DNA of 63,961 bases, the filler included, from Octopus bimaculoides (taxonomy: Eukaryota), in assembly GCF_001194135.2 (NCBI RefSeq). It is 7 parts of 7 records of this genome, joined end to end, with 100 filler letters (N's around TTAATTAATTAA, not from the genome) between each part and the next. Parts side by side here need not be neighbours in the genome. Positions count along the whole stretch, not along the records: positions 15,396 to 34,906 come from NC_068981.1; 6 more parts are not named here. One strand, written 5' to 3'. The position numbers and the translations under genes were made by a program. Shown piece by piece: positions 27,484 through 45,539 of this stretch (within the stretch, counting starts at the first letter, position 1; each line of letters starts with the position of its first letter). The notes below the pieces were generated by a model. That model was not told the DNA's origin and did no database searches. It saw only the letters and a list, made by a program, of their open reading frames with translations.

Positions 27484-27868
27484 TGTGGAGGCGCAATGGC
27501 CCAGTGGTTAGGGCAGCGGATTCGCGGTCATAGGATCGCGGTTTCGATTCCCAGACCAGGAGTCGTGAGTGTTTATTGGGCGAAAACACCTAAAGCTCCA
27601 CGAAGCTCCGACAGGGGATGATGGCCATCCCTACTGTACTCTTTCACTACAACTATCTCACACTCTTACTTCCTGTTTCTGTTGTGCCTGTAATTCAAAG
27701 GGCCAGCCTTGTCACACTGTGTCACGTTGAATATCCCCGAGAACTACGTTAAGGGTACACGTGTCTGGGGAGTGCTCAGCCACATGCACGTTAATTTCAC
27801 GAGCAGGCTGTTCCGTTGATCGGATCAACTGGAACTCTCGACGTCGTAAGCTACGGAGTGCCAGCAAC
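27484..27868 (+). mobile_element. tRNA-headed SINE family B, full length, with a 10-bp target-site duplication
   Basis: TGGCCCAGTGG A box, GGTTTCGATTCC B box; AGTGCTAAAC at 27470-27479 and 27872-27881. Confidence 0.9.
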
Positions 27869-28959
27869 AGCAGTGCTAAACAAGTACTTATTTTATCGAG
27901 TGTGAAAGTATGAATGGCAAAGTCAACCTCGGCAGAATTTGAACTCGGAACGCAAAGATGGACGAAATGCCATTAAAACATTTTTGCCAAGCTCGTTGAA
28001 TTAGATCAGCTAGAAACAATAGCTGAGCTTTGTGAAACACAGTGAAACACACTGGCTCAATGACTTCATGCCTGAATAAAAATAACGAAGTACGCGTTTC
28101 TAAAACATGTGACTCTGGGAACAATAGACAACGATATACGCACATACTAGAAATTATTGATGTAATATCTGTCATCGATTTGTAAACCCATTACAATAAC
28201 ATTTTTGTTTACAACCAAATATAATTACAGCTTTCCTATATTAAATTTCATACTGACAATGTTTGTGCACTTCAAACTAATGCTGTAGCAAGTAATGTTA
28301 ACTCAAGTAAATATTTTTTTTATTTATTTGTATTTATTGTGGTCGGTGGTGGTGAATTGCTTTCAAATTCATTTAGGTTAACATTAAGAAATAAGTTGAA
28401 AAATATTTTGTGTACATTTTAGAAAAAAATCTTACGAAAGTTATGTTATGTAAATGTTTATGTAATTAAAATATGGCTAATATTTCTTCTCTTTCACTGT
28501 CTACTAAGATTATTAACTCAAAGCAAGTTATTCTTATAGGAATTTTAGTAGAACTGTTCTGAAATACCGATTATTAGACACTTAGAATTAAGTATAAAAT
28601 TAGTTCCAATGTAATCAATCTGTCATTGTTTAGTGTATATGACCGCTCAAGTGGGTACTACTAAATACATATATTGAGAGAGTTTCATTGAGCAGAAAGA
28701 GCAGCCAGTTTTTTATTACTTGTGATATATCAACATTGTTCTAAAACTTCAAACAATTATTTCCTTGTGTTTTGTGTAAGGATATGTGTAACGTTGTATA
28801 GCGTTTTGTATAACGATCTACTAGATCTAAAGACATCAACATAACCACACAGACTATAAGAAATAGCAGCCAAATCCCTCTCAGTTACCATAAAGTAGCA
28901 TTAGAAAAGTATAAATACAGACAGGAGAATAAACGTGCTTCATATGTTCTTAATGCGTT

Positions 28960-29375
28960 AAGGAGCCTGCTTCCTAACCACATGGTTCCGAGTGCAGTCC
29001 CACTGCGTGGTACATTCATTCAGTGTCCTCTACTATAGCCTGGGGCCGAGCAAAGGCTTGCGAGTGGATTTCTTAGACGAAAACTAAAAGAAGCCCGTCG
29101 TCTGTATATGTGTGTGTGTATGTGTCTCTGTGTGCATGCGTGTGTGCGTGTGTGTGAGTGTCTTTGCATCTGCATTTGTCCCCCAAATGACGCTTGTGAA
29201 CCGGTGTTGGTGCGCTTATGTCCCCGTCACTTAGCGGTTTGGCAAAACAGGCCGATTGGCTAAGTACTTGGCTTTAAGATATAAGATCTGGCGTCGATTT
29301 ATTAGAATAAACAATTGAACAATTGCTCCAGCATGGCTGTAGTTAATTGAGTGAAAGAAGTAAAAGCATAAAAGG
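28960..29375 (+). mobile_element. Diverged SINE family A
   Basis: cctgcttcctaaccacatggttccgagtgcagtccc...gctccagcatggctgtag. Confidence 0.75.
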
Positions 29376-30396
29376 AGAAAGGAACGATATGTTTGTTACC
29401 TCCCCATTTCTTTCTCTTTGTATCTCTCTTTATCTATATATACATGCATACATACACACACACACACACAAACACAGACACACAAACATATACACATACA
29501 TANNNNNNNNNNNNNNNNNNNNNNNNNNNNNNNNNNNNNNNNNNNNNNNNNNNNNNNNNNNNNNNNNNNNNNNNNNNNNNNNNNNNNNNNNNNNNNNNNN
29601 NNNNNNNNNNNNNNNNNNNNNNNNNNNNNNNNNNNNNNNNNNNNNNNNNNNNNNNNNNNNNNNNNNNNNNNNNNNNNNNNNNNNNNNNNNNNNNNNNNNN
29701 NNNNNNNNNNNNNNNNNNNNNNNNNNNNNNNNNNNNNNNNNNNNNNNNNNNNNNNNNNNNNNNNNNNNNNNNNNNNNNNNNNNNNNNNNNNNNNNNNNNN
29801 NNNNNNNNNNNNNNNNNNNNNNNNNNNNNNNNNNNNNNNNNNNNNNNNNNNNNNNNNNNNNNNNNNNNNNNNNNNNNNNNNNNNNNNNNNNNNNNNNNNN
29901 NNNNNNNNNNNNNNNNNNNNNNNNNNNNNNNNNNNNNNNNNNNNNNNNNNNNNNNNNNNNNNNNNNNNNNNNNNNNNNNNNNNNNNNNNNNNNNNNNNNN
30001 NNNNNNNNNNNNNNNNNNNNNNNNNNNNNNNNNNNNNNNNNNNNNNNNNNNNNNNNNNNNNNNNNNNNNNNNNNNNNNNNNNNNNNNNNNNNNNNNNNNN
30101 NNNNNNNNNNNNNNNNNNNNNNNNNNNNNNNNNNNNNNNNNNNNNNNNNNNNNNNNNNNNNNNNNNNNNNNNNNNNNNNNNNNNNNNNNNNNNNNNNNNN
30201 NNNNNNNNNNNNNNNNNNNNNNNNNNNNNNNNNNNNNNNNNNNNNNNNNNNNNNNNNNNNNNNNNNNNNNNNNNNNNNNNNNNNNNNNNNNNNNNNNNNN
30301 NNNNNNNNNNNNNNNNNNNNNNNNNNNNNNNNNNNNNNNNNNNNNNNNNNNNNNNNNNNNNNNNNNNNNNNNNNNNNNNNNNNNNNNNNNNNNNNN

Positions 30397-30639: not shown

Positions 30640-31850
30640 CAGAGCAATACCAGAGGACTTGACAAGGAGTATCATAGCGAAGCTAGCAAAGCAAAGTAGT
30701 CTCAGTGATTGCAGCATCGTGCATGCTATTGTCTGATACTCGGTACCAGTCATGTTTTTTTATTCACTCCTGGTACAACGTTTGAAAGAGGCGTTGAATG
30801 AAAGATTCAGAGAAGTGCAGGCAGGATCCTGGGCAGTTAAATCGTGCTCTGTACCGATCTTTTAGTGCAGAATATTGTGGAACGTAGAATTCCAGGAACA
30901 ACTAGTCATCAGCATTATCGATTAAAAAGAAAAGAAAGGTTTGATTGGTTTCAGAAAGAAATACTGTGGTGCTGTACCAATGAATATTATTTCCCAGAGG
31001 AAGATATCGTCAACTTCAAGGGTCTGTATTCCGACTGATGTTGCTATGTAACAAGTGAAAGCGACAACATAGAATCCTTAGACGCCGTTACAATTGTGAG
31101 TCAGGGTTGTCTCCTGTCACATCTGCTGTTTTTTCTGCTTGTCGATTTAGTCATGAGGAGAGCCATAAATGGGTCAACTGCCGGAATACTGTGGACTGTA
31201 GGTAGACACCAAGTTGATTGGGACTACGTAGATTACGTTGTGCTCCCGGCTGAATCCGCTCAGGGCTCCAGCAATTCTGAGGAAGGAGCGATGCCAATTC
31301 CTGTGAATTAAAAAGATCCGTTGAAGACACCACCAATTTCATCTACCTGAGTAGCATCAATACCACAGAAGTGAAATGTTAATTAGGTAATTGTCAACGC
31401 TAGAATCGGGCGTGCAGCGGCAGTGTTCAGAAAAATAACCAAGATCTGGGTTAATTCTTCGATTAGCAACGGTTTGCCTATCCTGCTATATCAGAACATT
31501 GACCTCTCAAGATTCTACGCAGCGGAGACTTGGAAAATGACTGTCGAAATTACTCATCGGCTAGATTCAGCCCACCAACCGAGTCTTTACAGCATACTCA
31601 AAATCAACTACACGGTGCACTTGAGTATTCTTACGAATTGTAAGGCCCTAACAAGAGACAATCTACGATGCTTGTAGGAGATTTTAGCAGAAATACAGTG
31701 AGACGTTCAGGTCGTGTTTTTTAACAACCAAAAGAATCAACATTCAAGACAAGTATACAATCGATAGCACCAGTGGGAAGAAGAAAGTGGAGACACAAGA
31801 CGTTACGGTTGACACCTTCAAAGAAAATCTGAGGGAACTTAAGATCACCT
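30640..31850 (+). mobile_element. Heavily decayed RTE-type LINE (RT domain to C-terminal region)
   Basis: Fragments QRLKEALNERFREVQAG, VSQGCLLSHLLFFLLVDLVMRRA, DWDYVDY (degenerate YADD), YAAETWKMT; many frameshifts. Confidence 0.8.
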
Positions 31851-33038: not shown

Positions 33039-33241
33039 NNNNNNNNNNNNNNNNNNNNNNNNNNNNNNNNNNNNNNNNNNNNNNNNNNNNNNNNNNNNNN
33101 NNNNNNNNNNNNNNNNNNNNNNNNNNNNNNNNNNNNNNNNNNNNNNNNNNNNNNNNNNNNNNNNNNNNNNNNNNNNNNNNNNNNNNNNNNNNNNNNNNNN
33201 NNNNNNNNNNNNNNNNNNNNNNNNNNNNNNNNNNNNNNNNN

Positions 33242-33269
<28 letters not shown>

Positions 33270-33281
<12 letters not shown>

Positions 33282-33497
33282 TGTGTGTCTGTGTTTGTCC
33301 CCACCCCCATCATCGATTGACAACCGGTAGTGGTGTGTTTCCGTTCCCGTAACTTAGCGGTTCGGCAAAAGATTACGGTAGAATAAGTACGAAGCTTCCA
33401 AAGAATAAATCCTGGGGTCGATTTACTCGACTAAAAGGCGGTGCTCCAGCATGGACGCAGTCAAATAACTGAAACAAGTAAACTAGAAATAAAAGAG
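33270..33497 (+). mobile_element. SINE family A, 3' half
   Basis: gtttgtccc...ggcggtgctccagcatgg...gaaacaagta; follows a (TA)n run and a gap. Confidence 0.85.
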
Positions 33498-33503
33498 AAT
33501 TAA

Positions 33504-33669
33504 ATAGGCGCAGGAGTGGCTGTGTGTTAAGTTTACTGCTTACCAACCACATGGTCCAGACTTTAGTCCCACTGCGTGGCACCTTGGGCAGGTGTCCTCT
33601 ACTGGTGCCTTTAGCCGACCAAAGAATTCTGAGTGGATTTGGTAGACGGAAACTGGAAGAAGCCCGTCG

Positions 33670-33700
<31 letters not shown>

Positions 33701-33915
33701 GTTTGTGTATATTTTTGTGCGTTTGCTTATCCCCCCAACATCGCTTGAGAAGCGAGGCTGGTGTGTTTGCGTACCCGGAACTTAGCGGTTCAGCAAAAGT
33801 GACCGATAGAATAAGTACTAGGCTTACAAAGAATAAGCTCTGGTGTCGATTTGCTCGACTATAAAGGCGGTGCTCCAGCATGGCCGCAGTCAAATGACTG
33901 AAACAAGTAAAAGGG
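33504..33915 (+). mobile_element. SINE family A, full length
   Basis: Same head, microsatellite and tail; preceded by another 3' half at ~33270-33497. Confidence 0.9.
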
Positions 33916-33916
33916 T

Positions 33917-34149
33917 ATCATTTATATGTTACGGATATTTGTCCTCATCTTGTTTGTTGTTAACACAACGTTTCGGCTGGTATACCCTCCAGCCTTCTTC
34001 AAGTGTCTTGGAGAAATTTCGGACCAGGGTTCTCATTCGTAAGATATGTTCTGATATCATTATTATTATTATTATTATTCAGGTCACTGCCTGGAATCGA
34101 ACTCCGAATCTTAGTGTTAGTAGCCCGTGCTCTTAACCCCTAAGCCATA
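33917..34149 (-). mobile_element. Full-length tRNA-headed, hammerhead-bearing SINE-like element (family H)
   Basis: Minus strand reads: A-box-like TGGCTTAGGGG, B box GAGTTCGATTCC (34093-34104), (AAT)n, body, hammerhead motif, tail AACAACAAACAAGATGAGGACAAATATCCG. Confidence 0.85.
33962..34007 (-). ncRNA. Minimal type-I hammerhead ribozyme motif (C3U variant)
   Basis: GACAC-TTGAAGA-A-GGCTGG(agggtata)CCAGCC-GAA-ACGT-T-GTGTT: 5-bp stem I, 6-bp stem II, palindromic ACGT stem III. Confidence 0.7.
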
Positions 34150-34906
34150 AAGAACTGAATGAAAGAAAGTTTAGGTTTAGCTGTAGGATGTAGATGTAGT
34201 CCAGTAGTTCTTGCATACTATTGGTTTACTTTAGTTCAGGCTACCTCCTGGTCTCAGTAGGCAAAATGGAAAATGCATTGTCGTGGAGGGTGTCGAGGAA
34301 GATGAGCTGGAACAGCCCGATTGTGGTGAACTGAATTGTAGTACCGGAGCTGATAACACCGGGAGTCTACACTGCCACAGGATCGCTCATGAACCTATCA
34401 GAGAGCAACTGATACTTTGACAGTTTGCATTTGTCAGCTTGACTAGTAGCGGACTGGGCTGAGAGATGAACACTGATATCCCAGATGAGGGGCGTACCGC
34501 AACGGACCGCAAAAATTGTCATATCCCATTAAAATTGATTGAATTTGCTATTCAGAAAAATGAAAGATTGAAAACAAGAAGAAAAATGAAAAATGAAATA
34601 CTAAGAAAGAAACAAAATACATTCCTTATATATTTCATATTTGAACCCAAGTAATACCCCGGAAAGAGCGCGGGGTGGATACAGGTAAGTTCCCCCAAAA
34701 TTTGTATATCATTCTGTCAAAGGTTCCGGATGAACCTACTTCGCGGCGCGATTTCTAAATGAAGGCAGCAACACCAAACACCCTCGTTCATTATAAGCAA
34801 TATATTAGAGGAGGTTTTCAAGTAATGGAAACGGAGCAAAACTAACGGCAGTGCACCAGAAATGTGAACCAATAAAAGAGTGGATGATATATCTATATAT
34901 CAATAT

Positions 34907-45464: not shown

Positions 45465-45539
45465 TATTTACATTATTTATATTTGACGGATATTTGTCCG
45501 CATCTTGTTTGTTGTTAACACAAAGTTTCGGCTGATATA
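45465..45539 (-). mobile_element. 5'-truncated family H tail in the RB1-like intron
   Basis: gacggatatttgtccgcatcttgtttgttgttaacacaaagtttcggctgatat matches the family H 3' end up to loop II. Confidence 0.75.

What the first reader, a model, noticed from the sequence alone, without database searches (positions are those of the whole stretch)
33917..34149. A tRNA-headed (Pol III) SINE carrying a Penelope-type dimeric hammerhead ribozyme
Seen: a ~230-bp element recurs at 19341-19715 (+), 25259-25489 (+), 25124-25258 (-, 3' half), 33917-34149 (-) and 45465-45539 (-, tail). Its order is tRNA-like head with A/B boxes, (AAT)n, body, then consensus GACAC-CUGAUGA-A-GGCUGG(agggtata)YCAGCC-GAA-ACGU-U^-GUGUY, then a ~50-nt tail. 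This folds into a type-I hammerhead: 5-bp stem I (GACAC/GUGUY), full CUGAUGA and GAAA cores, 5-6-bp stem II, a GUU cleavage triplet, and a loopless palindromic ACGU stem III that can only pair between two molecules. Established: minimal type-I hammerheads with palindromic stem III acting as dimers are characteristic of Penelope-like elements and metazoan retrozymes. An extra A between A9 and G10.1 occurs in the active CChMVd viroid hammerhead. Schistosoma Sm-alpha is a precedent for a tRNA-promoter repeat with a hammerhead. Inference: this is a non-autonomous, self-cleaving retroelement that uses Pol III for transcription and a Penelope reverse transcriptase for mobility. It may produce abundant cleaved or circular small RNAs. 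I cannot check whether it is already described in cephalopods.
Basis: partly seen in the sequence, partly recalled or inferred. Interest (0 to 1): 0.9.

Follow-up and report, generated by a model that had tools for sequence, protein, structure and literature searches.

The report
Octopus tRNA-headed SINE with Penelope-type hammerhead
This is an old, decayed family of short mobile DNA in an octopus-type genome that joins a tRNA-like promoter head to the minimal, pair-requiring hammerhead ribozyme typical of Penelope retrotransposons; one insertion looks as if Penelope machinery pasted it in, which makes the family a moderately interesting new variant of known elements.

Summary
Four copies of a ~230-bp element lie in the piece, 76-85% identical pairwise. 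They are A 19326-19715 (+), B 25257-25482 (+), C 25086-25256 (-, 5'-truncated) and D 33917-34149 (-). Each full copy has a head with A and B boxes at exact tRNA spacing, then (AAT)n, a body, a 46-nt hammerhead motif and a tail.

The consensus hammerhead is complete: 12/12 core positions, 5-bp helix I, 6-bp helix II, a bulged A after A9, and a loopless palindromic ACGU helix III. That is the published Penelope 'min-HHR' architecture. Only B and C keep the full core. The index copy D has C3U and A has G12A. No shuffle reproduced either motif.

New evidence favours Penelope-type mobilisation. C is an inverted, 5'-truncated twin abutting B's 5' end. The pair sits inside one 12-bp target duplication, and only C carries a ~48-nt 3' extension.

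A translated copy matches an Octopus bimaculoides 'uncharacterized protein'. No further copies and no Penelope partner could be retrieved, so covariation, tail sharing, Pol III transcription and cleavage remain untested.

Schistosome Sm-alpha and animal retrozymes are precedents. Verdict: a real feature and a new variant of a known kind, with moderate interest.

The parts
33917..34149 (-). Copy D (index copy): full-length element with the short 3' end
   Evidence: Its 3' end abuts the 3' end of a different SINE at 33916/33917.
34137..34147 (-). Copy D A box, TGGCTTAGGGG (1 mismatch to TRGCNNAGTGG)
34093..34103 (-). Copy D B box, AGTTCGATTCC, 33 nt after the A box (tRNA spacing)
34058..34079 (-). 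Copy D internal (AAT)n microsatellite
33962..34007 (-). Copy D hammerhead motif: GACAC UUGAAGA A GGCUGG AGGGUAUA CCAGCC GAA ACGU U GUGUU. Core 11/12 (C3U), helix I 5/5, helix II 6/6. Predicted cleavage lies between 33967 and 33966.
   Evidence: The helix I + II fold is the MFE, z = -3.8.
34150..34161 (-). Tentative: 12 nt directly upstream of D's 5' end that resemble the reverse complement of the end of the long 3' extension (13/16 including the junction). Possibly a very short inverted arm.
   Evidence: a match of >=11/13 occurs in 0.2% of random 40-nt windows. This was found post hoc and carries low weight.
25257..25482 (+). Copy B: full-length element with the short 3' end
25259..25269 (+). 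Copy B A box, TGGCGTAGTGG (0 mismatches)
25303..25313 (+). Copy B B box, AGTTCTATTCC (2 mismatches), 33 nt after the A box
25327..25368 (+). Copy B internal (AAT)n, which has replaced the first ~20 nt of the body
25390..25435 (+). Copy B hammerhead motif: core 12/12, helix I 4/5, helix II 5/6. Predicted cleavage lies after 25430.
25086..25256 (-). Copy C: inverted, 5'-truncated copy that starts within the body and abuts B's 5' end head-to-head
25179..25224 (-). Copy C hammerhead motif: core 12/12, helix I 5/5, helix II 4/6
25086..25133 (-). ~48-nt 3' extension ('long tail') present on C but absent from B and D
   Evidence: Its translation NNLHDSSPLKYRTV matches the C-terminus of the O. bimaculoides ORF, NNVHNSSSLKYRTI (10/14, E = 3e-4).
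25074..25085 (+). Left target-site duplication, ATAAAATTAGTT, flanking the C+B composite
25483..25494 (+). Right target-site duplication, ATAAAATTAGTT, directly after B's 3' end
19326..19715 (+). Copy A. Head (A box destroyed) 19326-19396; (AAT)n 19397-19437; unrelated 70 bp 19438-19507; (TAA)n 19508-19573; body, hammerhead and tail 19574-19715.
19625..19670 (+). Copy A hammerhead motif: core 11/12 (G12A), helix I 4/5, helix II 4/6

Best explanation
This is a decayed family of a composite, non-autonomous retroelement in an octopus genome. Each copy differs from the consensus by about 7-13%.

Its 5' module is a tRNA-derived head (tRNA positions ~6-73) that keeps the internal Pol III A and B boxes. 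[quoted passage not shown] An (AAT)n tract joins the two.

Shown here: the anatomy, the copy structure, and one insertion with PLE-type architecture.

Inferred:
1. The head drives Pol III transcription.
2. The 3' module is what a PLE reverse transcriptase/GIY-YIG nuclease recognises. Insertion would proceed by target-primed reverse transcription from both ends of a staggered break. That would give a full copy plus an inverted truncated twin inside one target duplication.
3. The hammerhead can only form helix III, and in fact also helix I, between two RNAs. Any cleavage at GUU^G would therefore be concentration-dependent and in trans.
4. Full-length copies must descend from uncleaved RNA. The motif is therefore more likely kept as part of the RT-recognition and processing module inherited from the PLE than as an obligatory step for the SINE.
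5. A likely origin is insertion of a short PLE-derived 3' fragment into the (AAT)n tail of a tRNA SINE, since PLEs prefer microsatellites.
For: - Four copies with the same module order.
- Head divergence (81-84%) equals body/tail divergence (76-85%). Head and 3' module therefore spread as one unit in one burst.
- A/B boxes at the exact tRNA spacing of 33 nt in B and D, with 0 hits in 60 shuffles.
- No run of four or more T in the 270-nt sense consensus.
- Consensus hammerhead has 12/12 core positions, helix I 5/5, helix II 6/6 and a CG palindrome. There were 0 hits in 100 shuffles at thresholds that recover all four copies.
- The features that Cervera & de la Pena list as independent hallmarks of PLE min-HHRs are present. 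These are a nucleotide between A9 and 10.1 (4/4 copies), G10.1-C11.1 (3/4), palindromic 15.2-16.2 with no loop 3 (4/4) and helix I of 4-5 bp.
- C is an inverted 5'-truncated copy immediately adjacent to B's 5' end.
- A 12-bp direct repeat flanks the composite, not B alone. A repeat of >=12 nt arose in 0.4% of flank shuffles and in 1.8% of equally spaced window pairs.
- The 48-nt extension is on one arm only and is homologous to a second copy in O. bimaculoides.
- This matches the published PLE insertion pattern: an inverted 5'-truncated copy at the 5' end, a 30-40-bp one-sided tail, variable TSD, and a hammerhead near the 3' end. Dual min-HHRs 100-700 bp apart on opposite strands were also reported in schistosomes.
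- The family exists in O. bimaculoides (UniRef A0A0L8FV75, 85% identity, E = 3e-15).
Against: - No PLE RT or GIY-YIG sequence is in the piece, and none could be fetched. Tail sharing, the defining SINE-partner test, is untested.
- There are only four copies: 0 compensatory changes, and the hammerhead as a whole is no better conserved than its flanks (81.5% against ~80%).
- The head is not recognised as a tRNA by ARAGORN or Rfam.
- Both full copies start 2 nt upstream of box A. Pol III normally starts ~10 nt upstream, so the fixed 5' end is unexplained.
- Nearest-neighbour energies do not favour the double hammerhead (-28.5 kcal/mol) over two misfolded monomers (-31.4 kcal/mol). Published min-HHRs cleave poorly in vitro.
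- The TSD is AT-rich, and the same 12-mer occurs once more by chance at 28594.
- The PLE-type architecture rests on one clear insertion plus one tentative case.
Confidence: 0.6

Rival explanations
1. This is an ordinary LINE-mobilised tRNA SINE whose body happens to include a captured fragment of a Penelope pseudo-LTR. On this view the hammerhead is a dead passenger and PLE enzymes play no part in spreading the family.
For: SINE bodies are often mosaics (general knowledge). The piece holds other SINE families and an RT-like LINE remnant that is recognised only from recalled motifs. Most copies carry damaged hammerheads. No PLE was found nearby.
Against: Both arms of the C+B composite contain the same 3' region and share one TSD. 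L1-type twin priming does not produce this, whereas it is described for PLEs. The 3' ends have no poly(A) and no microsatellite. The element shows no similarity to the RT-like remnant at 31039-31674.
Confidence: 0.15
2. These are two independent elements seen side by side. One is a short tRNA SINE ending in (AAT)n. The other is a promoter-less Penelope-derived short element (retrozyme-like) that repeatedly targets such microsatellites.
For: PLEs show an insertion bias for microsatellites. Animal retrozymes are reported to lack promoters. Copy A has 70 bp of unrelated DNA between two (AAT)n tracts.
Against: All three head-bearing copies have the same order and orientation. Head and body show the same divergence. 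The 12-bp TSD encloses head plus body of B together with C. No solo head and no head-less full body occurs in the piece.
Confidence: 0.08
3. This is a genuine metazoan non-LTR retrozyme. It would be propagated from tandem arrays through hammerhead-cleaved, ligated circular RNAs, and the dispersed copies seen here would be by-products.
For: It has a type-I hammerhead and a unit size of 230-280 nt, within the published 170-400 nt range. The long extension ends in ...TATG and the head starts with TATGG, a 4-nt overlap that could hint at a tandem or circular master.
Against: No tandem copies were found (TRF found no ~230-bp period). Copy ends do not coincide with the cleavage site. The hammerhead lacks loop 1 and the loop-loop contacts of retrozyme hammerheads. 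Rfam Hammerhead_1 does not match.
Confidence: 0.07
4. The hammerhead-like motif is a chance resemblance in a repeat.
For: No Rfam hit, no covariation, and no activity data.
Against: The consensus has 12/12 core positions plus 11 of 11 stem pairs, the palindrome and the bulged nucleotide. There were 0 hits in 100 shuffles even at relaxed thresholds. Features not needed to define the motif agree with the published family.
Confidence: 0.01

Closest known systems
Minimal type-I hammerheads (min-HHR) of Penelope-like elements (Cervera & de la Pena 2014, PMC4209133; Lunse, Weinberg & Breaker 2017, not readable here)
   Same: CUGANGA and GAAA core; short helix I (5 bp) without a defined loop 1; an unpaired nucleotide between A9 and 10.1; a G10.1-C11.1 pair; palindromic 15.2-16.2 with no loop 3, so that helix III forms only in a dimer. 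The motifs occur dispersed and as pairs on opposite strands a few hundred bp apart. In copies B and D the cleavage site lies about 50 nt from the 3' end.
   Different: Here the motif sits behind a tRNA-like Pol III head in a 230-bp unit, not in the pseudo-LTR of a 3-kb RT/EN element. Helix II is 6 bp, against 7-8 bp in the schistosome families. Association with an actual PLE is not shown.
Sm-alpha / Sj-alpha SINE-like retroposons of Schistosoma (Ferbeyre et al. 1998; Laha et al. 2000; as summarised in PMC6765202)
   Same: A short non-coding repeat with a Pol III-type promoter and a type-I hammerhead. Cleavage can act in cis or trans on multimers.
   Different: Sm-alpha carries a canonical hammerhead with loop-loop contacts and a short looped helix III, and it is typically found in tandem. 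The octopus element has the loopless PLE-type minimal motif, is dispersed, and shows an inverted-twin insertion. Sequence homology was not tested because no Sm-alpha sequence was on hand.
Metazoan non-LTR retrozymes (Cervera & de la Pena 2020, PMC7229834; Li et al. 2026 preprint, 10.64898/2026.07.22.740005)
   Same: Small non-autonomous elements with type-I hammerheads, thought to depend on PLE enzymes. Some need dimers to cleave.
   Different: Retrozymes are tandem arrays without promoters of their own and are expressed as circular RNAs. This element is dispersed, not tandem, and carries A/B boxes.
tRNA-derived SINEs (SINE2), including the octopus OK, OR1 and OR2 families (Ohshima & Okada 1994)
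   Same: A tRNA-derived head with A/B boxes, ~230-280 bp, non-coding, dispersed, with a TSD.
   Different: The head lacks tRNA positions 1-5. The 3' end has neither poly(A) nor a LINE-type tail. It carries a ribozyme motif and a PLE-type insertion architecture. Whether it is already filed in Repbase or Dfam under another name could not be checked.
Non-autonomous PLE derivatives such as MRC1 of Chlamydomonas (Craig et al. 2021, PMC8557442)
   Same: Short elements that copy the insertion habits of PLEs and share 3' ends with autonomous families.
   Different: Those elements lack a small-RNA-gene head and canonical hammerheads.

Membership tests
PLE-type minimal hammerhead (min-HHR) | Conserved core: C3 U4 G5 A6 N7 G8 A9 ... 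G12 A13 A14, A15.1-U16.1, H17 | tested here: met
   12/12 in the consensus and in copies B and C. 11/12 in D (C3U) and in A (G12A).
PLE-type minimal hammerhead (min-HHR) | Short helix I (4-5 bp) and a stable helix II closed by G10.1-C11.1 | tested here: met
   Consensus helix I 5/5 and helix II 6/6. G10.1-C11.1 is present in 3 of 4 copies. The D fold has z = -3.8.
PLE-type minimal hammerhead (min-HHR) | [quoted passage not shown] | tested here: met
   An A in all four copies. In the O. bimaculoides copy an E-to-D change implies a pyrimidine at this position.
PLE-type minimal hammerhead (min-HHR) | No loop 3 and palindromic 15.2-16.2, so helix III forms only between two copies | tested here: met
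   ACGU is invariant in 4 of 4 copies. A nested double-hammerhead pairing is possible, at -28.5 kcal/mol.
PLE-type minimal hammerhead (min-HHR) | Covariation and compensatory changes within a genomic family | tested here: inconclusive
   0 pairs changed on both sides among 4 copies. No further copies were retrievable.
PLE-type minimal hammerhead (min-HHR) | Location in the pseudo-LTR or 3' end of an RT + GIY-YIG element | not testable with these tools
   No PLE coding sequence is in the piece, and no cephalopod genome is in the searchable collections.
PLE-type minimal hammerhead (min-HHR) | Self-cleavage as a dimer | not testable with these tools
   This needs a bench test. Thermodynamics is neutral.
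PLE-mobilised insertion | Inverted 5'-truncated copy adjacent to the 5' end of a full copy, a one-sided 30-40-bp tail, and a TSD around the whole unit | tested here: met
   The C+B composite has a 12-bp TSD and a 48-nt one-sided extension. D offers a tentative second case. This is one clear case only.
tRNA-derived SINE (SINE2) | Head derived from a tRNA, with A and B boxes | tested here: inconclusive
   Boxes are present at the exact 33-nt tRNA spacing in B and D, with 0 hits in 60 shuffles. No cloverleaf was found by ARAGORN or the Rfam tRNA model, and tRNA positions 1-5 are missing.
tRNA-derived SINE (SINE2) | Short, non-coding, dispersed, multi-copy, flanked by TSDs | tested here: met
   Four copies in 19.5 kb plus one in O. 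bimaculoides. A TSD was found for one insertion.
tRNA-derived SINE (SINE2) | 3' tail shared with an autonomous partner | not testable with these tools
   No partner sequence is available. There is no similarity to the RT-like remnant in the piece.
tRNA-derived SINE (SINE2) | Transcription by RNA polymerase III | not testable with these tools
   Only sequence hints are available: the boxes and the absence of T4 runs in the sense consensus. The 5' end lies 2 nt from box A, which is atypical.
Metazoan non-LTR retrozyme | Tandem head-to-tail repeats of the unit | tested here: not met
   TRF finds no ~230-bp period. The copies are dispersed or inverted.
Metazoan non-LTR retrozyme | Canonical type-I hammerhead with loop 1 / loop 2 contacts (Rfam Hammerhead_1) | tested here: not met
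   No Rfam hammerhead match even at E <= 10 on a 401-nt stretch. Helix I is open, with no loop 1.
Sm-alpha-like SINE | Pol III promoter plus hammerhead in one short repeat | tested here: met
   Met by sequence motifs only.
Sm-alpha-like SINE | Sequence homology to Sm-alpha / Sj-alpha | not tested

The most novel reading that the evidence does not exclude
This is a promoter-bearing SINE that parasitises Penelope reverse transcriptase through a min-HHR 3' module. On this reading it is the missing link between classical Pol III SINEs, promoter-less animal retrozymes and PLE pseudo-LTRs. It would explain part of the thousands of 'orphan' dispersed min-HHRs in animal genomes. Abundant Pol III transcripts would dimerise through ACGU and helix I and cleave one another, giving a concentration-gated pool of small 5'-OH / 2',3'-cyclic-phosphate or circular RNAs in octopus tissues.
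Probability: 0.25. Interest if true: 0.65.

Novelty: new variant of a known kind. Interest (0 to 1): 0.45.

Why it matters
Minimal hammerheads are very numerous in animal genomes. Their carriers, their transcription and their in vivo role are still open questions: reviews state that retrozymes seem to have no promoters of their own and that the role of PLE min-HHRs is unknown.

A family that couples such a motif to a recognisable Pol III head would give a defined, short, easily expressed substrate. It also shows the peculiar two-armed PLE insertion pattern on a 230-nt template. With it one could test what PLE reverse transcriptase recognises, whether dimeric cleavage happens in cells, and how the inverted or tandem PLE structures arise.

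It would also add PLEs to the list of SINE partners, which is usually limited to LINEs. Nothing here bears on health or safety.

Tried and rejected
- **Rfam cmscan.** I ran it at E <= 10 on the whole piece and on a 401-nt stretch. It gave no hammerhead and no tRNA; only microsatellite-driven miRNA noise appeared.
- **ARAGORN.** It found 0 tRNAs.
- **More copies, DNA route.** Pattern scans of the viral, metagenome and bacterial/archaeal genome collections gave only two unrelated chance hits.
- **More copies, protein route.** The sense-frame peptide found one O. bimaculoides ORF, whose DNA is not on record. The antisense peptide spanning head and body found nothing.
- **PLE partner in the piece.** Six-frame ORFs and Pfam found no RT, GIY-YIG or any other family. 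The RT-like remnant gave no significant hit in the large protein search.
- **Thermodynamic support for the dimer.** The result was neutral, so I do not use it as evidence either way.
- **Covariation.** It is uninformative with four copies.
- **Excess conservation.** The hammerhead as a whole shows none. The 14 core and helix III positions are 93% identical against ~80% elsewhere, but the pairs are not independent, so I treat this as a hint only.
- **Coding potential.** The sense frame is open for 40-90 codons in three copies and is annotated as a protein in O. bimaculoides. I rejected this as an annotation artefact: the frame runs through the microsatellite, copy B has a stop in it, and no family matches.
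- **Extension as a duplicate.** The 48-nt extension is not a duplicated part of the element.
- **TSDs for copies A and D.** None was convincing.
- **Literature.** Searches found no description of this family or of hammerheads in octopus SINEs. Repbase and Dfam could not be consulted.
Full report
**1. What is in the sequence**

Four related stretches exist:
- A, 19326-19715 (+)
- B, 25257-25482 (+)
- C, 25086-25256 (-)
- D, 33917-34149 (-)

A self-comparison of the piece finds no further members. Pairwise identity over the shared body, hammerhead and tail is 76-85%, and each copy is 87-93% identical to the four-copy consensus. The three heads are 81-84% identical to one another. Head and 3' part are therefore equally old. 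The pattern looks like a single burst followed by neutral decay.

- a ~70-nt head
- an (AAT)n tract of variable length
- a ~45-nt body
- a 46-nt hammerhead-like segment
- a ~47-nt tail

Copy A has about 70 bp of unrelated AT-rich DNA between two (AAT)n tracts, and its A box is ruined. In B the microsatellite has replaced the start of the body.

**2. The head**

ARAGORN finds no tRNA. The Rfam tRNA model does not match even when only 401 nt are searched at E <= 10. As a cloverleaf the head is degenerate.

A scan for TRGCNNAGTGG, a gap of 28-39 nt, then GGTTCGANNCC with at most two mismatches finds B (25259) and D (34147, - strand). Both have a gap of exactly 33 nt, which is the tRNA spacing. 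Sixty dinucleotide shuffles gave no hit. The third real hit, at 27497, is the head of an unrelated SINE with a complete acceptor stem.

In the element studied here, box A starts at the third base. The head thus corresponds to tRNA positions ~6-73, and both full-length copies begin at the same base. A Pol III start some 10 nt upstream of box A would lie in flanking DNA. The fixed 5' end is therefore not what a plain Pol III SINE predicts, and I leave it unexplained.

The 270-nt sense consensus contains no run of four T. That is compatible with Pol III read-through but is not significant on its own.

**3. The hammerhead**

I scored every position of the piece on both strands with a fixed-geometry descriptor. 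Its layout was: 5-nt helix I strand, CUGANGA, one bulged base, 6+8+6 hairpin, GAAA, a two-base palindrome, U, H, and a 5-nt helix I strand.

| Sequence | Core (of 12) | Helix I | Helix II | Note |
|---|---|---|---|---|
| Consensus | 12 | 5/5 | 6/6 | CG palindrome |
| B | 12 | 4/5 | 5/6 | |
| C | 12 | 5/5 | 4/6 | |
| D | 11 | 5/5 | 6/6 | C3 to U; its U7 to A is tolerated because position 7 is N |
| A | 11 | 4/5 | 4/6 | G12 to A |

At thresholds that recover all four copies there were no hits in 100 shuffles. The four copies are one evolutionary event, but the motif is plainly not chance.

The index copy folds into helices I and II as its minimum-energy structure (z = -3.8). The consensus monomer prefers a fold that sequesters part of the core.

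The sequence A15.1-C15.2-G16.2-U16.1 has no loop, so helix III cannot form within one molecule. In a symmetric dimer the four bases pair with their counterparts, and helix I also becomes intermolecular. Each RNA would then be cut by the core of the other.

The nearest-neighbour energy of that nested double hammerhead is -28.5 kcal/mol, against -31.4 for two separately misfolded monomers. This neither supports nor excludes the dimer, because the model ignores the tertiary core.

Rfam's hammerhead families do not match, which a missing helix III hairpin would explain.

**4. Comparison with the published Penelope motif**

Cervera and de la Pena (PMC4209133) describe the min-HHRs of Penelope-like elements as follows:
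- a long helix II
- no helix III loop, so that they should act as dimers
- low activity in vitro

[quoted passage not shown] Three of these four are met here. Covariation cannot be judged from four copies: there are 0 compensatory pairs, and 84% of cells are paired against 32-52% for slid partners.

The 14 core and helix III positions are 93% identical between copies, against ~80% elsewhere. The stems are less conserved (74%), and the motif as a whole is not distinguished from its flanks. I give this little weight.

**5. New evidence on how it moved**

C is inverted, begins inside the body, and abuts the first base of B. A 12-bp direct repeat, ATAAAATTAGTT, lies at 25074-25085 and at 25483-25494. 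It brackets C plus B together, whereas B alone has no duplication.

An exact repeat of at least 12 nt arose in 0.4% of shuffles of these AT-rich flanks and in 1.8% of equally spaced window pairs of the piece. The same word occurs once more by chance at 28594. The repeat is therefore good but not overwhelming evidence. Its placement exactly at the two outer ends adds weight.

C also carries about 48 nt beyond the point where B and D end. That extension is not flanking DNA. Translated, it matches the C-terminus of the one related sequence I could find elsewhere, an Octopus bimaculoides 'uncharacterized protein' that is simply a translated copy of this element (10 of 14 residues).

Craig et al. 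(PMC8557442) describe PLE insertions as follows:
- frequent 5' truncation
- a 30-40-bp tail at one end only
- target duplications of variable length
- hammerheads near the 3' end

Cervera and de la Pena also noted pairs of min-HHRs 100-700 bp apart on opposite strands. The C+B unit fits all of this. It does not fit L1-type twin priming, which does not duplicate the 3' region.

A second, tentative case exists. The 12 nt directly upstream of D resemble the reverse complement of the very end of the long extension (13 of 16 including the junction). A match of at least 11/13 is seen in 0.2% of random 40-nt windows. I found this after the fact and count it only as a hint.

**6. What could not be done**

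No cephalopod DNA is reachable with these tools.
- Pattern scans of the viral, metagenome and prokaryote genome collections gave nothing related.
- The DNA of the O. bimaculoides ORF is not on record.
- An antisense peptide query that would have tested head-body linkage in other copies found nothing.
- The piece holds no recognisable Penelope RT or GIY-YIG sequence.
- An RT-like remnant at 31039-31674 looks LINE-like to me from recalled motifs, but neither Pfam nor the large protein search confirmed it. It shares nothing with the element's tail.

The decisive SINE-partner test, a PLE with the same 3' end, therefore remains open. So do transcription, cleavage and circular RNAs.

**7. Most likely mechanism**

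Shown: a composite repeat with a tRNA-derived, box-bearing head and a Penelope-type minimal hammerhead module. It spread as one unit, and at least one insertion has PLE-type architecture.

Inferred:
- The head provides Pol III transcription.
- The 3' module is the handle by which a PLE reverse transcriptase/GIY-YIG nuclease copies the RNA into a staggered break, priming from both DNA ends. This yields one full and one aborted, inverted arm within a single duplication.
- Cleavage at GUU^G would detach the ~50-100-nt tail from the promoter-bearing part, so all copies seen here must come from uncleaved RNA. For this SINE the hammerhead is thus more plausibly a retained part of the PLE recognition and processing module than a required step.
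- If it cleaves at all, it would do so in trans between abundant transcripts.
- A plausible origin is the insertion of a short PLE 3' fragment into the (AAT)n tail of a tRNA SINE, given the microsatellite preference of PLEs.

I put 0.6 on this overall picture. The anatomy is near certain, PLE mobilisation is about two in three, and in vivo cleavage is below even odds.

**8. Rivals**

- A LINE-mobilised SINE with a captured dead PLE fragment (0.15). The two-armed insertion and the absence of a LINE-type tail argue against it.
- Two separate elements that merely sit together at microsatellites (0.08). Equal divergence of head and body, constant order, and the TSD enclosing both argue against it.
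- A true tandem or circular retrozyme (0.07). The lack of tandem copies, ends that do not match the cleavage site, and the lack of loop 1 argue against it.
- Chance (0.01).

**9. Known or new**

The parts are known.
- Min-HHRs of PLEs are described as massive and widespread, and mostly dispersed.
- Schistosome Sm-alpha/Sj-alpha are SINE-like, apparently Pol III-transcribed repeats with hammerheads.
- A 2026 preprint argues that animal retrozymes are non-autonomous PLE derivatives and likens the pair to SINEs and LINEs.
- Octopus tRNA-derived SINEs have been known since 1994.
- Rfam-type hammerheads have been counted in the giant squid genome.

I found no description of a tRNA-headed SINE carrying the loopless PLE-type motif, of such a SINE with PLE insertion architecture, or of this octopus family. 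Reviews state that retrozymes seem to lack promoters of their own. Repbase and Dfam could not be consulted, so the repeat itself may well be catalogued without its ribozyme being noticed.

I class it as a new variant of a known kind, with interest 0.45.

Noticed in passing
window 23742-24175, 28954-29379, 33248-33482, 33523-33916: A second, more abundant repeat of ~400 bp with an internal (TA)n tract (often an assembly gap). Read on the opposite strand it starts with a tRNA-like head (GGCGCAGGAGTGGCTGTGTGGTAAG...GGTTCCGGGTTCAGTCCC), followed by a segment that I recall as MIR/CORE-like. It is probably the octopus CORE-SINE of Ohshima & Okada; this was not tested. One copy meets hammerhead-SINE copy D tail-to-tail at 33916/33917.
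   Followed up: partly
window 27487-27560 (+); also 22251-22373 ~ 27744-27867: A third tRNA-derived head with a full acceptor stem and near-perfect A/B boxes (TGGCCCAGTGG ... GTTTCGATTCC, gap 33). A 120-bp repeat is shared between 22.3 kb and 27.8 kb. This is a different SINE family, and it has no hammerhead.
   Followed up: partly
window 31039-31308 and 31387-31674 (+): Decayed open frames with motifs I recall from LINE (RTE/CR1-type) reverse transcriptases: SQGCLLSHLLF, DWDYVDYVVL, ARIGRAAAVFRKITKIW...ETW. Pfam and the large protein search gave no significant hit, so this remains unverified.
   Followed up: partly
window 19438-19507: About 70 bp of AT-rich DNA unrelated to the family lies between two (AAT)n/(TAA)n tracts inside copy A. 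It could be a later insertion or rearrangement in the microsatellite, or a sign that head and body can sit apart.
   Followed up: no
window 25086-25089 and 25257-25261; 34145-34149: The long 3' extension ends in ...ACTGTATG and the head starts with TATGG. This 4-nt overlap could reflect a tandem or circular master, or microhomology at junctions, or it could be chance. Both full copies start at the same base, only 2 nt before box A.
   Followed up: partly
window 18299-18567, 23976-24014, 29503-30396, 33039-33241: Four runs of N (assembly gaps), each flanked by dinucleotide microsatellites ((TA)n, (GT)n, (AC)n). Rfam's weak miRNA 'hits' in the piece all fall on such microsatellites and are noise.
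   Followed up: yes
UniRef A0A0L8FV75_OCTBM (protein P0001): A 51-aa 'uncharacterized protein' of Octopus bimaculoides is a translation of this repeat, running from the body through the hammerhead and tail. It is an annotation artefact. It also places the window in an octopus or a close relative.
   Followed up: yes
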